This document shows, in pieces, positions 1,542-47,484 of a DNA stretch of 64,000 bases (within the stretch, counting starts at the first letter, position 1; every line of letters starts with the position of its first letter). The notes under the pieces were generated by a model that saw only the letters and a program-made list of their open reading frames with translations, was not told the DNA's origin and did not search any database. The DNA lies in IMG/VR virus record IMGVR_UViG_3300020477_001008, positions 1 to 64,000 of that record; one strand, 5' to 3'. The position numbers and the translations under genes are program-made.

Positions 1542-2764
1542 TGAAACCTTATTGCATAGCACCATTTGTACATTTATATCAACATAGTCAAAGTCTAGAT
1601 GATAGAGTATGTTGCATTAGTAAAATAAACAAAGCTGATGATAATAGAGATAATGGTGTTGATAATAACTTACAAAGCAAATGGGAAAATGAATATTATC
1701 AAGACATTAGAAAAAGAATGTTAGAACCAGGTTCAGATTTACCTGAATGTGCAGAATGTATTAGGTTAGAAAAACAAGGACAAACTAGCGATAGATTAAA
1801 TTTTGAAAGTCGTTTTAAAAATCAATATATAGAATTTAATACTATAACTGGTAACCAATATAACCATCCATTAGATTATGATTTACGTCCAGGAAACTTA
1901 TGTAATTTAGGTTGTAGAATGTGTAGTCCAATGAGTAGTACACAATTAAGTAAAGAATATAAAAAACATAAAGATGATTTTAATGATCTTGTTCCTGAAA
2001 CTTTTTTTACAATGGAAGATGGTTGTGATTGGGACTATAAAGAAAACCTAGATTGGATTAAAGAAAATTTGTTATCAGGTAAAACAAATAGAATTAAATT
2101 CCTTGGCGGTGAACCTACAATAATGCCAGGTGTATTAGAATTACTTGACTTTATGATTGATAATAGTTTAACACGAACATCATTATCTTTTACTACAAAT
2201 TGTACAAATGAAAACAGACATTTTGTTAGTAAAGTATCAAGGTTTACTGATGTATATTTTCATTTTTCAATAGATGGTATTGGTAGAACATTAGAATACA
2301 TTAGACATCCTGCTAAATGGAACAAAATAAATGAAAATATTAGAAAATTATCTTCTAATAAGAGTTGGATAGCACCAATGTGTAATACAACTATTCAAGC
2401 ATATAATATTCATCATTTAAAAGATTATGTTTATTGGTTAAAAGCATTAAACAAAATCAGACACGTAGAACTCAATACAGTAATAATAGATTATCCAAGT
2501 CATATGAGTTATAAAGTACTTCCAGTAGAATATAGAAATTGCTATATTGTTGATTTAATTAATGATCCTATAATGCAATGGGACGTAATAAAACAATCTA
2601 ATTTAAGAGCAAACCTTAAAACTATATTAGAAGATAAAACTGTTGAAGGTACTGATAAGTTTATAGAGCATACTAAAGCATTTGATAAAGTTAGGAATCA
2701 AAATATAAAAAATTATATTCCACAACTAGCTAGTTATTTTGGTCTTTCAAATAGGTATCAGTAA
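1541..2764 (+). CDS. Radical SAM protein with N-terminal SPASM/Twitch-like Cys cluster
   Basis: CNLGCRMC (CxxxCxxC), GGEP, N-terminal CxxP...CC...CxxC. Confidence 0.9.
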   Translation: MKPYCIAPFVHLYQHSQSLDDRVCCISKINKADDNRDNGVDNNLQSKWENEYYQDIRKRMLEPGSDLPECAECIRLEKQGQTSDRLNFESRFKNQYIEFNTITGNQYNHPLDYDLRPGNLCNLGCRMCSPMSSTQLSKEYKKHKDDFNDLVPETFFTMEDGCDWDYKENLDWIKENLLSGKTNRIKFLGGEPTIMPGVLELLDFMIDNSLTRTSLSFTTNCTNENRHFVSKVSRFTDVYFHFSIDGIGRTLEYIRHPAKWNKINENIRKLSSNKSWIAPMCNTTIQAYNIHHLKDYVYWLKALNKIRHVELNTVIIDYPSHMSYKVLPVEYRNCYIVDLINDPIMQWDVIKQSNLRANLKTILEDKTVEGTDKFIEHTKAFDKVRNQNIKNYIPQLASYFGLSNRYQ

Positions 2765-10812: not shown

Positions 10813-10820
10813 ATGTAAAA

Positions 10821-10868
10821 CGTTCATCTGGTATAACAGACGGAAGTAAGCACTAGCTGAAGGAACGC
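10821..10868 (+). ncRNA. Glutamine riboswitch (glnA / Downstream-peptide class)
   Basis: P1 CGTTC/GAACG, P2 TCTG/CAGA, junction CGGAAGTA, P3 AGC/GCT, GAA E-loop; 25 nt upstream of an ORF. Confidence 0.85.
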
Positions 10869-10893
10869 ACTTAACTGTAAAAAGGAGAGTGTT

Positions 10894-11067
10894 ATGAGAG
10901 ACACAAAAGGACTAGAAGCTTACACTGATAAGATCAATAAAGAAAAGAAGGCTAAGGCACTTAATAGAACACTACGTAAGAGTGTTGAAACGGGTGCAAA
11001 TGGCACACAGAACTATGTGGTCAAGAGTGGTAAGAACAAGGGTAAGATAGCTTCTAAAGGACAGTAG
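10894..11067 (+). CDS. Small basic protein under the riboswitch (57 aa, MRDTKGLEAYTDKINKEKKAKALNRTLRKSVETGANGTQNYVVKSGKNKGKIASKGQ)
   Basis: SD AAGGAG; hand translation. Confidence 0.75.
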   Translation: MRDTKGLEAYTDKINKEKKAKALNRTLRKSVETGANGTQNYVVKSGKNKGKIASKGQ

Positions 11068-11563
11068 AACTGAACATAAACAGGCTGGTTAACACACTGA
11101 AATAATGGGTGGTCAAAAGGTTAAGGTACATCTCTCTTCACCCAGAAAAAAGGTCATAAAAGTATATTCTAAGATCATAAAACCTACCGTAAGATATCTA
11201 CAGACCCAAAAAGACCATTTTTCCCACCTTTCCCATCATACCCCAAGGTTCTGATATTGCCCCGCCTTTCAGGCTATGAGCCCATAACTGATAGGGGCCA
11301 AATATTCCCACCTTTCTCTATAATGATCTATATTGGTCAGAGAGCCGATCAGCACTACGTTGCTTTCAGCACTCGTGCTGTCTAGCTTGATGCCTGACCG
11401 TAATATGCTTCCTATGTTGGTTGACTCCGGGTACTCTACAATACCGTCAACCACAACATATAGTCACAGCAGTATCAGAGAGAAAACATTTTTTGAACAC
11501 ATTTCAAACACATTTGATCTAATGGTTACTAGATATAGTGCCGTTGCAGAATGAACACACCCC

Positions 11564-11607
11564 TCACGACAGCGTTTGACCTGGGATCTAGCGTAGGGCT
11601 CGCTATT
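11564..11607. repeat. Bipartite repeat copy 1: TCACGAC-N24-AGGGCTCGCTATT
   Basis: Identical arms and exact 24-nt spacer in three copies. Confidence 0.9.
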
Positions 11608-11634
11608 AGCTTTCGCTGGCTTGGCAAGAATTGG

Positions 11635-11662
11635 TTGACAAATCTGGATAATGTGTTAATAT
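11635..11662 (+). promoter_or_regulatory. Early sigma70-type promoter
   Basis: GGTTGACA-N16-TAATAT with TG. Confidence 0.75.
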
Positions 11663-11697
11663 AGTATTAATTAACCAATATAGCCGAGGAGGGCAAT

Positions 11698-11919
11698 ATG
11701 GCAACTAAAGATACATTATACAAATTCCACGCAACAGTAACAATGCCAAGCGGAAAGCAAAGACATTTGTTTACTAACGACACAGTTAGCAGAACAAAAG
11801 TTCTTATTAAAGCTGGTGTTGATATGAGTGGTGTTAATTGGATTGCATTAGACACTCCAATGACTAAAGCTCAGGTGATAGCTTCTGGGGAACCAGCAGT
11901 TACTACTCAAGTAGCTTAA
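11698..11919 (+). CDS. Hypothetical early protein (ends -VA)
   Basis: Own promoter; SD GAGGAGG. Confidence 0.75.
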   Translation: MATKDTLYKFHATVTMPSGKQRHLFTNDTVSRTKVLIKAGVDMSGVNWIALDTPMTKAQVIASGEPAVTTQVA

Positions 11920-11924
11920 CTCGT

Positions 11925-11968
11925 TCACGACGGTTTTGGCGGGCTCTTATCGCAGAGGGCTCGCTATT
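11925..11968. repeat. Bipartite repeat copy 2
   Basis: TCACGAC-ggttttggcgggctcttatcgcag-AGGGCTCGCTATT. Confidence 0.9.
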
Positions 11969-11978
11969 AAAGATCTAA

Positions 11979-12215
11979 TTATTCTGAATAATCCGGAAGA
12001 GGGCCACCATACTTCTTACCTTTGACTGTTTTATGGCCCACAGTCTTTCTTTTACCATCTAGCTTGTGTTCACGATCCGAATCACGTCTACGCAATCCTT
12101 TTGATCTACAGCTTGATAACCAGCTGGCAGGTAGCTCTGAATCAGGCTTACCACTCTTACACACTTTGGTAGGGGCTGGTCCTATATTGTCTGTTATGAT
12201 GTCTGACACTTTCAT
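11979..12215 (-). CDS. Small basic late protein (possible internal head protein)
   Basis: Perfect TATAAATA at 12221-12228 on the - strand; MKVSDIIT N-terminus resembles T4-type capsid-targeting leaders. Confidence 0.65.
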   Translation of the reverse strand: MKVSDIITDNIGPAPTKVCKSGKPDSELPASWLSSCRSKGLRRRDSDREHKLDGKRKTVGHKTVKGKKYGGPLPDYSE

Positions 12216-12234
12216 ACAAGTATTTATAAACGGT

Positions 12235-12278
12235 TCACGACAGTAATTAGAGTTGCAAAACCAAAAGGGCTCGCTATT
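12235..12278. repeat. Bipartite repeat copy 3
   Basis: TCACGAC-agtaattagagttgcaaaaccaaa-AGGGCTCGCTATT. Confidence 0.9.
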
Positions 12279-12408
12279 GCCTTTAAGGGGTGGGGTGGTT
12301 TAAATGTACTACCTTTGTACTTTTGAACTTAAACCATTGATTCTTGGTGGTTTGGGGCCTGTTTTGTTTGTTTCAGTCTGCGTAGTCCCGGCCCCTGAGA
12401 CGAAGTTT

Positions 12409-29479: not shown

Positions 29480-30661
29480 CTATCTGATTTTAATGATATT
29501 CATTAGCTCTGATAACTCAGGAAACGTTTTATCAAATGACTCTACTCTTACTAAATCCATTCTGTATATGTGCCTCTTAAACTCACCTATTTTATTACTA
29601 CTATCGCTGTTTTCCATAAATTGAATTACTTGGTTGAATCCTTTATAATTATAGTCTAAAAGCCTATCTTTTACAACCTCTTTTAAGAAGCTTGGTAATG
29701 TAGAGATGTTATAATGCTTGGGTTCGTGTAATGTATTTAGGTATACTTTCATACCAAAATTATCAGTCCAGTCTATGAATTCAGGCAAGTAAAAAGCATT
29801 AAAAATATTAACAGTATGACATATAGATAAATCTAGCTTATTTGATTCATATGTTTGCCACACTTCTAAATTCTTCAGTACTTGCTCCCATTTAGCTGGG
29901 TGTCTTTGGTATTCAAATTGTTTACCTATACCATCGATACTAAAATGCACATCAACATATTTGAAATGCGGAAATATATTATCAAGAGCATCTAATGGCA
30001 ATTGTGTTCCATTTGTGTTATAGTGTAAGCTGATTTTATGTGCGTGTCCTTGTTTTATAATCTTATGTAAAAGATCCAAATGTTCTTTTATCATAAACGG
30101 TTCACCACCTGTAAAATCCAAATGCTCTAGTACAGGAATTAGTGATTCAACATTTTTCCAAAACACTTCTGATTTTTCTGGCCAATCAAGTCTTTCATAA
30201 AACTTAATATCTTTATCAATTATATCATATTTTCTTTGTTCTGAAATCCATTTAGATGAGTATTGTGGAGAACAAATTCTGCATTTAAGATTACATATAT
30301 TTCCAAGTTTTAAATCCAAATATCTAGGAGCAGATTCTTCCCATATGATTTTATCATTAATTAAATGCTTGTATTTTGCATTATCTCTTACTCTTTTAGA
30401 TGCTTTACCCGACATTTCTTCCATCCAACATCTATGGCATCCACGTGGTTGTGTGCCAGATAAAAACCTTTTACGTATAGTAGCTAGTTCTTCACTATTC
30501 CATATTTCTTGGAATTCTTCACGTTGGATTTTATATTCTTGACCATTTTCCTTTTTTAGTGTATCTTTATACATACAGCACGGTTTTACTGTGCCGTTAG
30601 GTTGGACTTCTAAACCAGTCCAAGGAAGAATACAAAAATTTTGAGGTAATTTATTATCCAT
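29480..30661 (-). CDS. Radical SAM/SPASM-Twitch protein
   Basis: CNLKCRIC, GGEP, FCILPW..PCC..CHRC. Confidence 0.9.
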   Translation of the reverse strand: MDNKLPQNFCILPWTGLEVQPNGTVKPCCMYKDTLKKENGQEYKIQREEFQEIWNSEELATIRKRFLSGTQPRGCHRCWMEEMSGKASKRVRDNAKYKHLINDKIIWEESAPRYLDLKLGNICNLKCRICSPQYSSKWISEQRKYDIIDKDIKFYERLDWPEKSEVFWKNVESLIPVLEHLDFTGGEPFMIKEHLDLLHKIIKQGHAHKISLHYNTNGTQLPLDALDNIFPHFKYVDVHFSIDGIGKQFEYQRHPAKWEQVLKNLEVWQTYESNKLDLSICHTVNIFNAFYLPEFIDWTDNFGMKVYLNTLHEPKHYNISTLPSFLKEVVKDRLLDYNYKGFNQVIQFMENSDSSNKIGEFKRHIYRMDLVRVESFDKTFPELSELMNIIKIR

Positions 30662-46098: not shown

Positions 46099-47484
46099 TC
46101 ATAAGCAACTTTCATAAAATTCTTCCAATTCCGGAAAAACTTTTTTAAATGATTTGTTCCTTCTTTTATCATATTCATTAATATATCTTACAAAATCATT
46201 TCTAGTTATATTTAAGTTAATTTGCTCAGCTTCGTTTGGATCTGCTTCTGCATATGACTTAAAACGCATTAATTTAGCTAGTTCAAAATCAAAAAACCCT
46301 TTATATGGGTTGTTATGTGTTTCAGCATTATTCTCCATAACTGCCACAGCAGGATCTAATAATGATCCATATTTTTTAGGTAATATTGAAGCACTCAAAT
46401 AAGCAGGGTGCCTTAAAATTGCTGTGTCTATTGTTATTGGTACTTTTCTATCATTGCTATAAAATTCTGTTTTTAATGGATGTATTATATCAAGTAACTT
46501 ATGCAACCTTGGCATACTTAATAATCCAGTTGTACACATAATTGTAATTTTTGTTTTTGGTAATTCAGTTAGCACACGACACATATTATCATACCATTGA
46601 TTAAAGTCTAACCCATCTCTAATATACTCTGCTTGTTCGCCAAATGTATCAACTGATGTGTATAGTCTTGTTAAACCAATTTTATTATCTAATGTTATAC
46701 GTTTCATTTTTTCAATGTATTGATCAAACAGTTTATCTGGTACGCAACCATTTGAGTTAATGCTTAATTCTAATTCTGGTCTTGGATTGTTATTAACATA
46801 ATCTAATACTTTAAAAGTATCTTTTGCTAATAGAGGTTCCCCGCCTGTAATTCTAAAAACCTGGAGAGTTTTGTACAGGTCGGGAAACCATTTCCAAAAA
46901 GCGTCAACATAAGGATTATGTTCACGATGCGGAATCGGTAATTTGCCTTGTTGTTTTAGCCAAGACAAGTTATTAAATTTATCGCTTGTAGGATATGCAC
47001 CTTCAGATTGTATTTCTTCCATCCAGGAACTACTGAATGCAGGACTACAATATGCACATTTTAAATTACAAACATTTGAAAAACTAACTTCAACATAAGT
47101 TGGATTAACATTTTCTACGCCAACCATTTTAGCAGTTTCTTCTAAATATGGTTTAGCCCACGGCTCGTGTGATTTAGAACTTCTATCGCTATAATGTTCT
47201 GGACCTAGATCTTCTACGTTCCAACAGTATTGACATTCAGGAGGTCGTACTCCTTTTAACATTAATTCTCTTTGTGATTTTTTATATTCAGTATTGTGTA
47301 AAGCACTAGGATTAGTTTTTAATTCTTCTACAGGAACTTGGTGTGTTCTAGGGTGATGACAACTATGTGTATGACCATATTGTAAATGAATAGTTGACTG
47401 ATACCATTTCGCTAGACAGAATGATGGCGATACAGCATTAAGCTGATCTCTTGTCTGCTTGATTTTAATAACTTCATCTGTCAT
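46099..47484 (-). CDS. Radical SAM/Twitch protein (paralog of 42127)
   Basis: CNLKCAYC, GGEP, FCLAKW..SCHH..CQYCW. Confidence 0.9.
   Translation of the reverse strand: MTDEVIKIKQTRDQLNAVSPSFCLAKWYQSTIHLQYGHTHSCHHPRTHQVPVEELKTNPSALHNTEYKKSQRELMLKGVRPPECQYCWNVEDLGPEHYSDRSSKSHEPWAKPYLEETAKMVGVENVNPTYVEVSFSNVCNLKCAYCSPAFSSSWMEEIQSEGAYPTSDKFNNLSWLKQQGKLPIPHREHNPYVDAFWKWFPDLYKTLQVFRITGGEPLLAKDTFKVLDYVNNNPRPELELSINSNGCVPDKLFDQYIEKMKRITLDNKIGLTRLYTSVDTFGEQAEYIRDGLDFNQWYDNMCRVLTELPKTKITIMCTTGLLSMPRLHKLLDIIHPLKTEFYSNDRKVPITIDTAILRHPAYLSASILPKKYGSLLDPAVAVMENNAETHNNPYKGFFDFELAKLMRFKSYAEADPNEAEQINLNITRNDFVRYINEYDKRRNKSFKKVFPELEEFYESCL

What the first reader, a model, noticed from the sequence alone, without database searches (positions are those of the whole stretch)
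11564..12278. Three bipartite repeats TCACGAC-N24-AGGGCTCGCTATT bracketing single genes
Seen: identical 7-nt and 13-nt arms with unrelated spacers of exactly 24 nt at 11564, 11925 and 12235, all co-oriented and 361/310 bp apart. One small gene with its own promoter lies between successive copies (one early-type on +, one late-type on -). I saw no other copy in the window. Inference: bipartite protein-binding sites near the physical genome end (terminase/pac, terminal-repeat processing or ejection start), or recombination sites of a gene-cassette system.
Basis: partly seen in the sequence, partly recalled or inferred. Interest (0 to 1): 0.7.

Follow-up and report, generated by a model that had tools for sequence, protein, structure and literature searches.

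The report
Bipartite junction repeats bracketing phage genes
Three exact copies of a two-box DNA signal with a fixed gap flank two small genes in an uncultured marine T4-like phage. Relatives show the same signal marking the edges of genes that come and go, so it looks like a junction of a gene-cassette hot spot, although the protein that reads it is unknown.

Summary
TCACGAC-N24-AGGGCTCGCTATT occurs exactly three times (11564, 11925, 12235, all on +) and nowhere else in the 242,646-bp record; chance expectation is zero.

- **Conserved spacing.** In 42 distinct units from 19 marine contigs, the heptamer lies 26 or 27 nt before GGCTCGCTATT. The spacers between them diverge freely.
- **Core 11-mer.** GGCTCGCTATT is far more widespread. 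In 60 IMG/VR stretches it sits as a co-oriented pair just 3' of homologues of the window's minus-strand late gene (57 with that gene visible, 3 cut at the stretch end), and nowhere else in those contigs.
- **Variable content.** Extra copies bracket a homing endonuclease, other ORFs or a tRNA-Arg. Some relatives carry two or three empty units where the window has genes.
- **RNA layer.** Units that directly follow a + strand ORF have spacers that pair with the 11-mer. This forms a stem-loop that is strong only on the + strand RNA.

Best reading: these are module-junction elements of a hypervariable locus, recognised as DNA at two boxes and used as crossover points. They work like PeSLs or attC sites but belong to neither family.

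The terminus/pac reading has no support, and a guide-RNA reading is rejected. No recombinase was found, so the mechanism is inferred (confidence 0.4).

The parts
11564..11607 (+). Unit 1: box A TCACGAC (11564-11570), 24-nt spacer, box B AGGGCTCGCTATT (11595-11607). It lies 28 nt upstream of the -35 hexamer of gene 1's early promoter.
   Evidence: Orthologous units with the same spacing are present in L151-L165, L203 and L227.
11635..11662 (+). Sigma-70-type early promoter of gene 1 (TTGACA-16-TAATAT, with an upstream TG).
   Evidence: It belongs to a repeated early-promoter family.
11698..11919 (+). Gene 1: a 73-aa early protein of unknown function. Its family is narrow, with 24 clusters. The predicted fold is beta-beta-alpha-beta-alpha.
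   Evidence: Metatranscriptome contigs cover 11721-11975.
11925..11968 (+). Unit 2: box A starts 5 nt after gene 1's stop codon, and box B ends 10 nt before gene 2's stop codon.
11937..11966 (+). Stem-loop inside unit 2. The spacer pairs with box B over 12 pairs, 4 of them G-U. The fold is -19.6 kcal/mol on the + strand RNA against -7.2 on the other strand.
   Evidence: Spacer changes that keep the pairing are seen in L151, L159, L162, L203 and L227.
11979..12215 (-). Gene 2: a 78-aa basic late protein. Its family has more than 400 clusters. In other T4-like phages it sits directly after the major capsid gene gp23.
12221..12228 (-). T4-type late promoter TATAAATA of gene 2, 5 nt before the ATG.
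   Evidence: Sequence. The same arrangement is seen in relatives.
12235..12278 (+). Unit 3, just upstream of gene 2's late promoter. It is followed on + by a G-rich tract.

Best explanation
The three repeats are copies of a 44/45-bp junction unit: box A TCAC(G)AC, a free spacer of fixed length, and box B (A)GGGCTCGCTATT. This unit marks module boundaries in one hypervariable locus of an uncultured marine T4-like myovirus lineage, probably phages of SAR11.

Box B is the old, widely conserved part. It flanks a small late capsid-module gene (gene 2) that has been moved out of its usual place after gp23. Box A at a fixed distance is an addition found only in the window's own lineage.

**Most likely mechanism (inferred).** The unit is read as double-stranded DNA by a sequence-specific factor that touches both boxes about 3.3 helical turns apart. 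The units then act as preferred crossover or insertion points where genes, a tRNA or a homing endonuclease are gained, lost and swapped.

**Second layer (shown by sequence and folding).** Where a unit directly follows a + strand ORF, its spacer has evolved to pair with box B. That gives the ORF's transcript a 3' stem-loop.
For: **Shown**
- The repeats are exact, co-oriented and unique to this locus.
- In 42 distinct units from 19 contigs, the best A-like heptamer is always 26 nt (32 units) or 27 nt (10 units) before GGCTCGCTATT. Conservation drops to background outside the two boxes.
- Orthologous units in relatives with 97, 90 and 82% gene-2 identity keep the spacing, while the spacers are partly or wholly replaced.
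- The 11-mer, with up to 1 mismatch, occurs in 739 kb of related loci only at this position, and in four whole 67-124 kb records only there.
- Of 63 IMG/VR stretches holding a pair, 57 show a gene-2 homologue just upstream, 3 are cut at the stretch end and 3 are unrelated coding repeats. All copies are co-oriented, spaced 11, 12, 20 or 30 nt.
- At least 9 unrelated gene families follow the pair.
- Extra copies bracket a homing endonuclease, two ORFs in L022 and tRNA-Arg.
- L204, L198 and L247 have gene 1 followed by two or three empty units and then the homologue of the window's 207-aa gene. They lack gene 2 and the 120-aa and 133-aa genes.
- Homology between the window and L162 or L166 breaks at the box edges.
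- In the available metatranscriptomes, units 1 and 3 have no RNA cover. The box-B strand is antisense to both flanking late genes in the pair-type loci.
Against: - No tyrosine or serine recombinase or GIY-YIG gene was found in the 242-kb record, though the record is only about 55% of the genome.
- No excised or rearranged molecule was observed.
- Homology breaks at conserved islands are partly an alignment effect.
- Not every variable-gene boundary in the window has a unit.
- The + strand-specific stem-loops, and box A starting 4-5 nt after stop codons, show that at least some units act in RNA.
- 11-13 bp is short for homologous recombination.
Confidence: 0.4

Rival explanations
1. Transcription punctuation. 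The unit acts in, or on, the + strand transcript as a terminator, attenuator, 3'-end stabiliser or roadblock site. Its role is to insulate the isolated late gene from convergent early transcription. Bracketing of genes is then a by-product of sitting at the ends of transcription units.
For: - 12 of 40 units fold into strong stem-loops with box B as the 3' arm (z -2.3 to -4.3). The folds are weaker on the other strand because of G-U pairs, and different spacers preserve the pairing.
- Box A starts 4-5 nt after the stop codon in these units.
- RNA contigs from two runs cover gene 1 through unit 2 and stop at 11972 and about 11992. Gene 2 is not covered.
- The unit upstream of tRNA-Arg ends 8 nt before the tRNA. 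It would therefore be a stable 3' end after RNase P cleavage.
Against: - Two thirds of the units have no stem-loop, yet they keep both boxes and the spacing.
- There is no U tract after the stem.
- The signal is used at one locus only in 242 kb.
- Three units in tandem behind a separate GC hairpin, as in L204, are hard to explain.
- In the pair-type loci, box B lies on the strand antisense to both neighbouring late genes.
- Copies occur inside ORFs.
Confidence: 0.3
2. Operator or iteron cluster. The boxes are binding sites of one dedicated DNA-binding protein that controls this locus only. The function could be a replication origin, a partition or condensation site, or a regulator of gene 2. 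The pairs spaced 11, 20 or 30 nt would place bound proteins on one face of the helix.
For: - One locus per genome.
- Pair spacings close to 1, 2 and 3 helical turns.
- Neighbouring arrays of short tandem repeats and inverted repeats upstream of gene 2 in relatives.
- Highly basic proteins are encoded next to it.
Against: - The sites sit beside, and even inside, different genes in different phages.
- Units persist where gene 2 is absent.
- No initiator or ParB-like gene was identified.
- The gene 1 and gene 2 models gave no DNA-binding fold.
Confidence: 0.15
3. One reading: terminase/pac or terminal-repeat processing sites at the physical end of the genome.
For: It is a unique locus with repeated asymmetric sites, 11.5 kb from the end of the record.
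Against: - The record has no end repeats and is about 55% complete.
- A related contig appears to run on about 17.7 kb beyond the locus in that direction.
- T4-like phages package by headful without a fixed end (textbook knowledge).
- The sites bracket variable genes in many contexts.
- Only contigs, not reads, are held for the public runs, so no read-start pile-up could be seen.
Confidence: 0.03
4. Guide-RNA or mini-CRISPR-like units, in which the 24-nt spacers target other sequences.
For: The layout is conserved ends with a variable middle of fixed length.
Against: - No spacer has a match of more than 12 nt elsewhere in the genome, which is chance level.
- The boxes are 7 and 11-13 nt and are separated by whole genes, so they are not contiguous repeats.
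- There is no Rfam match.
- Units 1 and 3 have no RNA cover.
- Some spacers are constrained to pair with box B.
Confidence: 0.02

Closest known systems
PeSLs (promoter-early stem-loop cassettes) of T4-type phages (Arbiol et al. 2010, PMC2839356; Comeau et al. 2014, PMC4122927)
   Same: Both are short conserved motifs at gene boundaries in hyperplastic regions of T4-like phages. Both are associated with indels and replacements of small ORFs and with no dedicated recombinase, and a stem-loop is part of the element in some copies.
   Different: - PeSLs contain a sigma-70-type promoter. They are conserved over about 100 bp and occur in many copies across the genome.
- These units contain no promoter. 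They have two short boxes at a fixed 26/27-nt distance with a free spacer, and occur at one locus only.
- Box B is conserved across far more divergent phages.
Integron attC sites and cassette arrays
   Same: - Co-oriented sites with conserved ends and a variable middle, one per cassette boundary.
- Single-gene cassettes and empty sites.
- Sites that overlap ORF ends.
   Different: - The two boxes are not inverted repeats, and most units do not fold.
- No IntI-type recombinase was found in the record.
- The enclosed genes have their own promoters and lie in either orientation.
Free-standing homing endonuclease insertion sites in T-even phages
   Same: In L133/L094 a homing endonuclease gene with its own late promoter sits exactly between two box-B pairs. 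Relatives have a single pair at that place.
   Different: Box B is conserved in the great majority of phages that lack the endonuclease, and it is duplicated on both sides of the insert. It is therefore more than an endonuclease target.
Bacterial REP/BIME elements and the RNase III punctuation sites of T7 early mRNA
   Same: They are intergenic, lie just after stop codons, occur singly or in tandem, and can stabilise or end upstream transcripts.
   Different: Those elements are defined by their hairpins. Here two thirds of the units have no hairpin, and what defines the unit is two sequence boxes at a fixed spacing.

Membership tests
PeSL (promoter-early stem-loop) | A sigma-70-type early promoter lies within the element. 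| tested here: not met
   No promoter-like site falls inside any of the three 44-nt units. Unit 1 has a separate promoter 28 nt downstream, and units 2 and 3 have none.
PeSL (promoter-early stem-loop) | A stem-loop terminator is part of every element. | tested here: not met
   Only 12 of 40 units fold significantly. Units 1 and 3 of the window do not.
PeSL (promoter-early stem-loop) | Many copies are spread over the hyperplastic regions of the genome. | tested here: not met
   There are three copies at one locus in 242,646 bp, and one locus per record in relatives.
PeSL (promoter-early stem-loop) | The elements flank ORFs that differ between close relatives. | tested here: met
PeSL (promoter-early stem-loop) | Recombination between copies gives mini-circles. 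| not testable with these tools
   This needs inverse PCR or raw long reads. The public runs are held as contigs only.
Integron attC | Imperfect inverted repeats (R''/L''...L'/R') fold as single-stranded DNA. | tested here: not met
   Box A and box B are not complementary. The mean fold z-score is -0.8 on + and -0.4 on -, and most units are unstructured.
Integron attC | An IntI tyrosine recombinase and attI are present in the same element. | tested here: not met
   PF00589 is absent from the record while all 14 control genomes are positive. The record is about 55% complete, so absence from the whole phage is not proven.
Integron attC | A co-oriented array with one site per cassette. | tested here: met
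   All copies are co-oriented in every locus. Single genes, a tRNA or nothing lie between the copies.
CRISPR array / guide RNA | Contiguous repeats of 23 nt or more at a regular short period, with spacers that match targets. | tested here: not met
   The boxes are 7 and 11-13 nt and lie 310-361 bp apart. The spacers have no target in the genome.
pac/cos terminase site | Position at the physical terminus, with read starts piling up. | not testable with these tools
   Only assembled contigs are held for the runs. The end of the record is not shown to be a genome end.
Intrinsic terminator | A GC-rich hairpin followed by a U tract. | tested here: inconclusive
   Unit 2 has a 12-pair hairpin (z -3.0) but is followed by AUUAAAGAUC rather than a U run. 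RNA contigs end 4 to about 24 nt after it.
Iteron-type origin or centromere | Clustered direct repeats bound by an initiator or partition protein encoded nearby. | tested here: inconclusive
   Direct repeats at helical spacing exist. No initiator or ParB-like protein was identified, and the gene 1 and gene 2 models gave no DNA-binding fold.

The most novel reading that the evidence does not exclude
Marine T4-like phages carry an integron-like cassette platform of their own. Its 44/45-bp bipartite sites (box A, 26/27 nt, box B) would be recognised by an as yet unknown recombinase or nuclease. Through this platform small genes, tRNAs and homing endonucleases would be captured, excised and exchanged between co-infecting phages.
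Probability: 0.2. Interest if true: 0.8.

Novelty: new variant of a known kind. Interest (0 to 1): 0.6.

Why it matters
How large lytic phages gain and lose the small accessory genes that fill their hyperplastic regions is an open question. PeSLs are the only proposed vehicle so far, and they were described in coliphage and vibriophage relatives.

This element is different in three ways. It has strict geometry. It is conserved across hundreds of marine contigs. It marks presence/absence polymorphisms of ORFs, a tRNA and a homing endonuclease. It also comes with a clear molecular handle, two boxes at a fixed spacing, that can be mutated and used for pull-downs.

If it is a recombination site, it would define a new site-directed route of gene flow in the most abundant ocean myoviruses. 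If it is a transcription insulator, it would show how a late gene can be parked inside an early region.

Tried and rejected
- **Named phages:** near, distant and protein searches of the phage collection gave no match, so no annotated relative could be used.
- **Exact bipartite pattern in IMG/VR:** none found, probably because the window's own record is left out.
- **Rfam:** nothing at the units at either threshold.
- **Common RNA fold:** the three copies share no fold on either strand.
- **Spacer targets:** chance matches only in the window's own genome.
- **Micro-ORF idea:** no frame is open in more than 32 of 42 units, and a 27-nt spacing breaks the frame.
- **False positives:** L102, L127 and L132 also hold pairs of the 11-mer, but L127 and L102 are 36-nt repeats (L127 reads as a 12-aa coding repeat) and L132 is an 18-nt repeat. 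They were treated as unrelated.
- **Host motif idea:** box B is at chance level in five SAR11 genomes, and the single exact hit lies in a coding region.
- **Pfam and PHROGs:** no hit for gene 1 or gene 2.
- **Atlas look-up of gene 2:** only unnamed viral clusters.
- **Structure models:** gene 1 reached pLDDT 78 but had no PDB match (Foldseek E above 0.2, VIA Z at most 3.1). The gene 2 model is poor, at pLDDT 65.
- **Literature string search:** searching for the motif found only unrelated primers.
- **Reads:** laying contigs showed no clean deletion joint at unit boundaries. The one joint near unit 2 has a short side and is probably a divergent relative.
- **Cyanophage assumption:** dropped after the riboswitch-linked peptide matched only Pelagibacteraceae.

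Full report
**Observation**

The pattern TCACGAC-N24-AGGGCTCGCTATT occurs at 11564, 11925 and 12235, all on the + strand. Even with three mismatches allowed there is no further match in the window, and none of 100 shuffles gave one. The 13-mer, with up to one mismatch, is found only at these three places in the whole 242,646-bp virus record. The three spacers are unrelated to one another.

Between copies 1 and 2 lies gene 1 (11698-11919, +, 73 aa), behind a sigma-70-type promoter at 11635-11662. Between copies 2 and 3 lies gene 2 (11979-12215, -, 78 aa). Gene 2 has a T4-type late promoter, TATAAATA, at 12221-12228 on the minus strand, 5 nt before its ATG.

The claim that the locus is near a physical genome end is not supported. 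The record has no end repeats and is rated 55% complete. A related contig appears to run about 17.7 kb beyond the locus on that side.

**What kind of genome**

A glutamine riboswitch (RF01739, 61 bits) lies at 10819-10871, in front of a 57-aa ORF. All but one of the 56 cellular homologues of that ORF are in Pelagibacteraceae. The early and late promoter types, and the gene-2 relatives that sit beside gp21-gp23 genes, mark the phage as T4-like. It is most likely a large uncultured myovirus of SAR11. The collection of named phages gave no match.

**Box B is widely conserved**

Gene 2 belongs to a large family of small basic proteins, with more than 400 clusters and no Pfam or PHROG family. In some T4-like contigs this gene lies directly after the major capsid gene gp23. 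I read that as its usual, possibly original, place.

In a large subgroup of IMG/VR contigs the gene lies elsewhere. There it is followed, about 20 nt after its stop codon and on the opposite strand, by the core GGCTCGCTATT.

- **Scan for pairs.** A scan for two copies up to 30 nt apart found 63 stretches. Of these, 57 show the gene-2 homologue just upstream and 3 are cut at the stretch end. The other 3 are unrelated repeats of 36 or 18 nt.
- **Orientation and spacing.** All copies are co-oriented. Start-to-start spacings are 11 nt (46 times), 30 nt (9), 20 nt (4) and 12 nt (3).
- **Specificity.** In 739 kb of related loci the 11-mer, with up to one mismatch, occurs almost only there. In four whole records of 67-124 kb it occurs only there.
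- **What follows.** The gene after the pair belongs to at least nine unrelated families. In about ten loci it is convergent. The pair is therefore tied to the 3' side of gene 2, not to the next gene.

**The bipartite unit is conserved in the window's own lineage**

Contigs carrying gene 2 at 97, 90 and 82% identity (L151-L165) have three units at the orthologous places. Each keeps exactly 26 nt between TCACGAC and GGCTCGCTATT. Meanwhile the spacers diverge: the spacer of copy 1 is almost wholly replaced, and copy 3 of L162 is replaced completely. More distant contigs have 27 nt.

Over 42 distinct units from 19 contigs, the best A-like heptamer within a 20-33 nt range always lies at 26 nt (32 units) or 27 nt (10 units). 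Column conservation falls to background right outside the two boxes. Among the chance hits of the metagenome scan, the gap is spread evenly from 14 to 40 nt.

Contigs from four independent marine metagenomes span the window's units in the same arrangement.

**The enclosed genes vary**

- **Empty units.** L204, L198 and L247 have a gene-1 homologue, then two or three units in tandem with nothing between them. L204, the longest, then continues into the homologue of the window's 207-aa gene (78% identity). No gene 2 was found in any of the three. In L204 the 120-aa and 133-aa genes that the window carries at this place are missing as well.
- **A tRNA.** L205, L251 and L226 have tRNA-Arg(ACG) between two units.
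- **A homing endonuclease.** L133/L094 have a homing endonuclease gene (phrog_655, E 1.5e-50) between two box-B pairs. The second pair is homologous to the single pair of L108 and L148.
- **Two ORFs.** L022 has two ORFs between the pair and a third copy, and that copy overlaps an ORF end.
- **A copy inside an ORF.** In L090, L099, L137 and L136 a third copy lies in frame inside the 3' part of a UDP-glucose dehydrogenase gene.
- **Homology breaks.** Homology between the window and L162 runs exactly from the start of box A1 to box A3. Homology with L166 runs from just before box B2 to gene 2's promoter.

**DNA or RNA?**

The three window copies share no fold. However, 12 of 40 units fold strongly, with z-scores from -2.3 to -4.3. 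In those examined, box A starts 4-5 nt after the stop codon of a + strand ORF.

In these units the spacer pairs with box B as the 3' arm. The fold is much weaker on the other strand because of G-U pairs: for unit 2 of the window, -19.6 against -7.2 kcal/mol. Different spacers achieve the same pairing.

Metatranscriptome contigs from two runs cover gene 1 through unit 2 and stop at 11972 and about 11992. Other RNA contigs cover the 120-aa early gene. Gene 2 and units 1 and 3 have no cover, but these are assembled contigs of low depth.

So box B has been recruited as a stem-loop arm at the 3' ends of + strand genes. Even so, most units keep both boxes and the spacing without any fold. In the pair-type loci, box B lies antisense to both neighbouring late genes. 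That points to recognition as DNA.

**What it is not**

- The spacers have no target in the genome.
- The units are not coding.
- Rfam has nothing at the units.
- Box B is not a host motif: it is at chance level in five SAR11 genomes.
- The record holds no tyrosine or serine recombinase and no GIY-YIG gene, and has only a weak HNH_3 match far away.
- Gene 1 is always next to A-type units. Its model has a small beta-beta-alpha-beta-alpha fold (pLDDT 78) with no solved relative. The gene 2 model is poor. No reader protein can be named.

**Comparison with known systems**

The units work like the PeSLs of T4-type phages, which are conserved boundary motifs that mediate modular shuffling without a dedicated recombinase (PMC2839356, PMC4122927). 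They also resemble integron attC sites: co-oriented, with conserved ends and a variable middle, one per cassette.

They fail the defining tests of both families:
- there is no promoter inside the unit, no obligatory stem-loop, and only a single locus per genome;
- the arms are not inverted repeats, and no IntI-type gene was found.

A string search of the literature found no paper that contains the motif other than as unrelated primers.

**Verdict**

The cassette reading is partly supported by comparative evidence. The terminus reading has no support.

The best explanation is a bipartite junction element of a hypervariable locus, read as DNA and used as a crossover point, with a secondary role of box B in 3' stem-loops (confidence 0.4). 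A pure transcription-punctuation role (0.3) and an operator or iteron role (0.15) remain open.

Noticed in passing
window 10819-11067: A glutamine riboswitch (RF01739, 61.4 bits) precedes a 57-aa ORF (phrog_32989). All but one of the ORF's 56 cellular homologues are in Pelagibacteraceae. So this is a phage-borne riboswitch-controlled host-like peptide, and it points to SAR11 as the host.
   Followed up: partly
L169-L171: 1269-2785: The gene-2 family lies directly after the major capsid gene gp23 in a gp21-gp22-gp23 module in some T4-like contigs. In the window the gene is an isolated late gene inside an early region.
   Followed up: partly
window 11528, 12857, 14386, 18708: The motif ACTA-N-AT-N-TAGT is half of the palindrome GGCACTA-N4-TAGTGCC seen in relatives. 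It occurs four times in 242 kb, all within 7 kb. Two copies abut the -35 hexamer of early promoters, and one lies 22 nt before unit 1.
   Followed up: partly
L004:5700-5815; L011-L036, about 100-250 nt upstream of gene 2: Arrays of short tandem repeats lie between gene 2 and a divergent late gene for a very basic protein of 147-164 aa. The repeat unit differs from phage to phage. In L004 the unit has an 11-nt period and contains the same heptamer as box A. A conserved block of about 70 nt with an inverted repeat (AAGTTGATCTT/AAGATCAACTT) follows.
   Followed up: partly
window 10350, 11632, 13346, 14408, 14889: A family of about 40-nt early-promoter cassettes (GGTTGACAAAT...TGTTAAT/TATA) is repeated in front of small + strand genes. 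They are PeSL-like in the sense of conserved promoters at ORF boundaries.
   Followed up: no
window 11917, 14137, 14759; A1 alignment: Several small early proteins end in -VA or -AVA: gene 1 and all its relatives, the 207-aa protein and the 96-aa protein. This conserved C-terminal dipeptide could be a degradation or recognition tag.
   Followed up: no
L127:1-1470; L102: L127 has about 40 tandem 36-nt repeats that read as a 12-aa repeat (xxxExPxxxERA), and L102 has a shorter 36-nt repeat. They matched the 11-mer by chance and are unrelated to the finding.
   Followed up: yes
window 1718-2764, 29480-30661, 46099-47484: At least three radical-SAM genes, one with a weaker QueE-like match, lie in the window. 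This suggests nucleotide or glycan modification functions.
   Followed up: no
window 12279-12300 and after box B in many relatives: Box B is often followed on its strand by G-run tracts such as GGGGTGGGGTGG or GGGGTTTGGGGTT. Their meaning is unknown; they could favour G-quadruplex or R-loop formation.
   Followed up: no
window 11068-11563: About 500 nt between the riboswitch ORF and unit 1 are conserved at 85-87% in relatives. They have a higher GC content and no convincing ORF. A 48-nt block (11107-11154) is even conserved in the distant L004.
   Followed up: no
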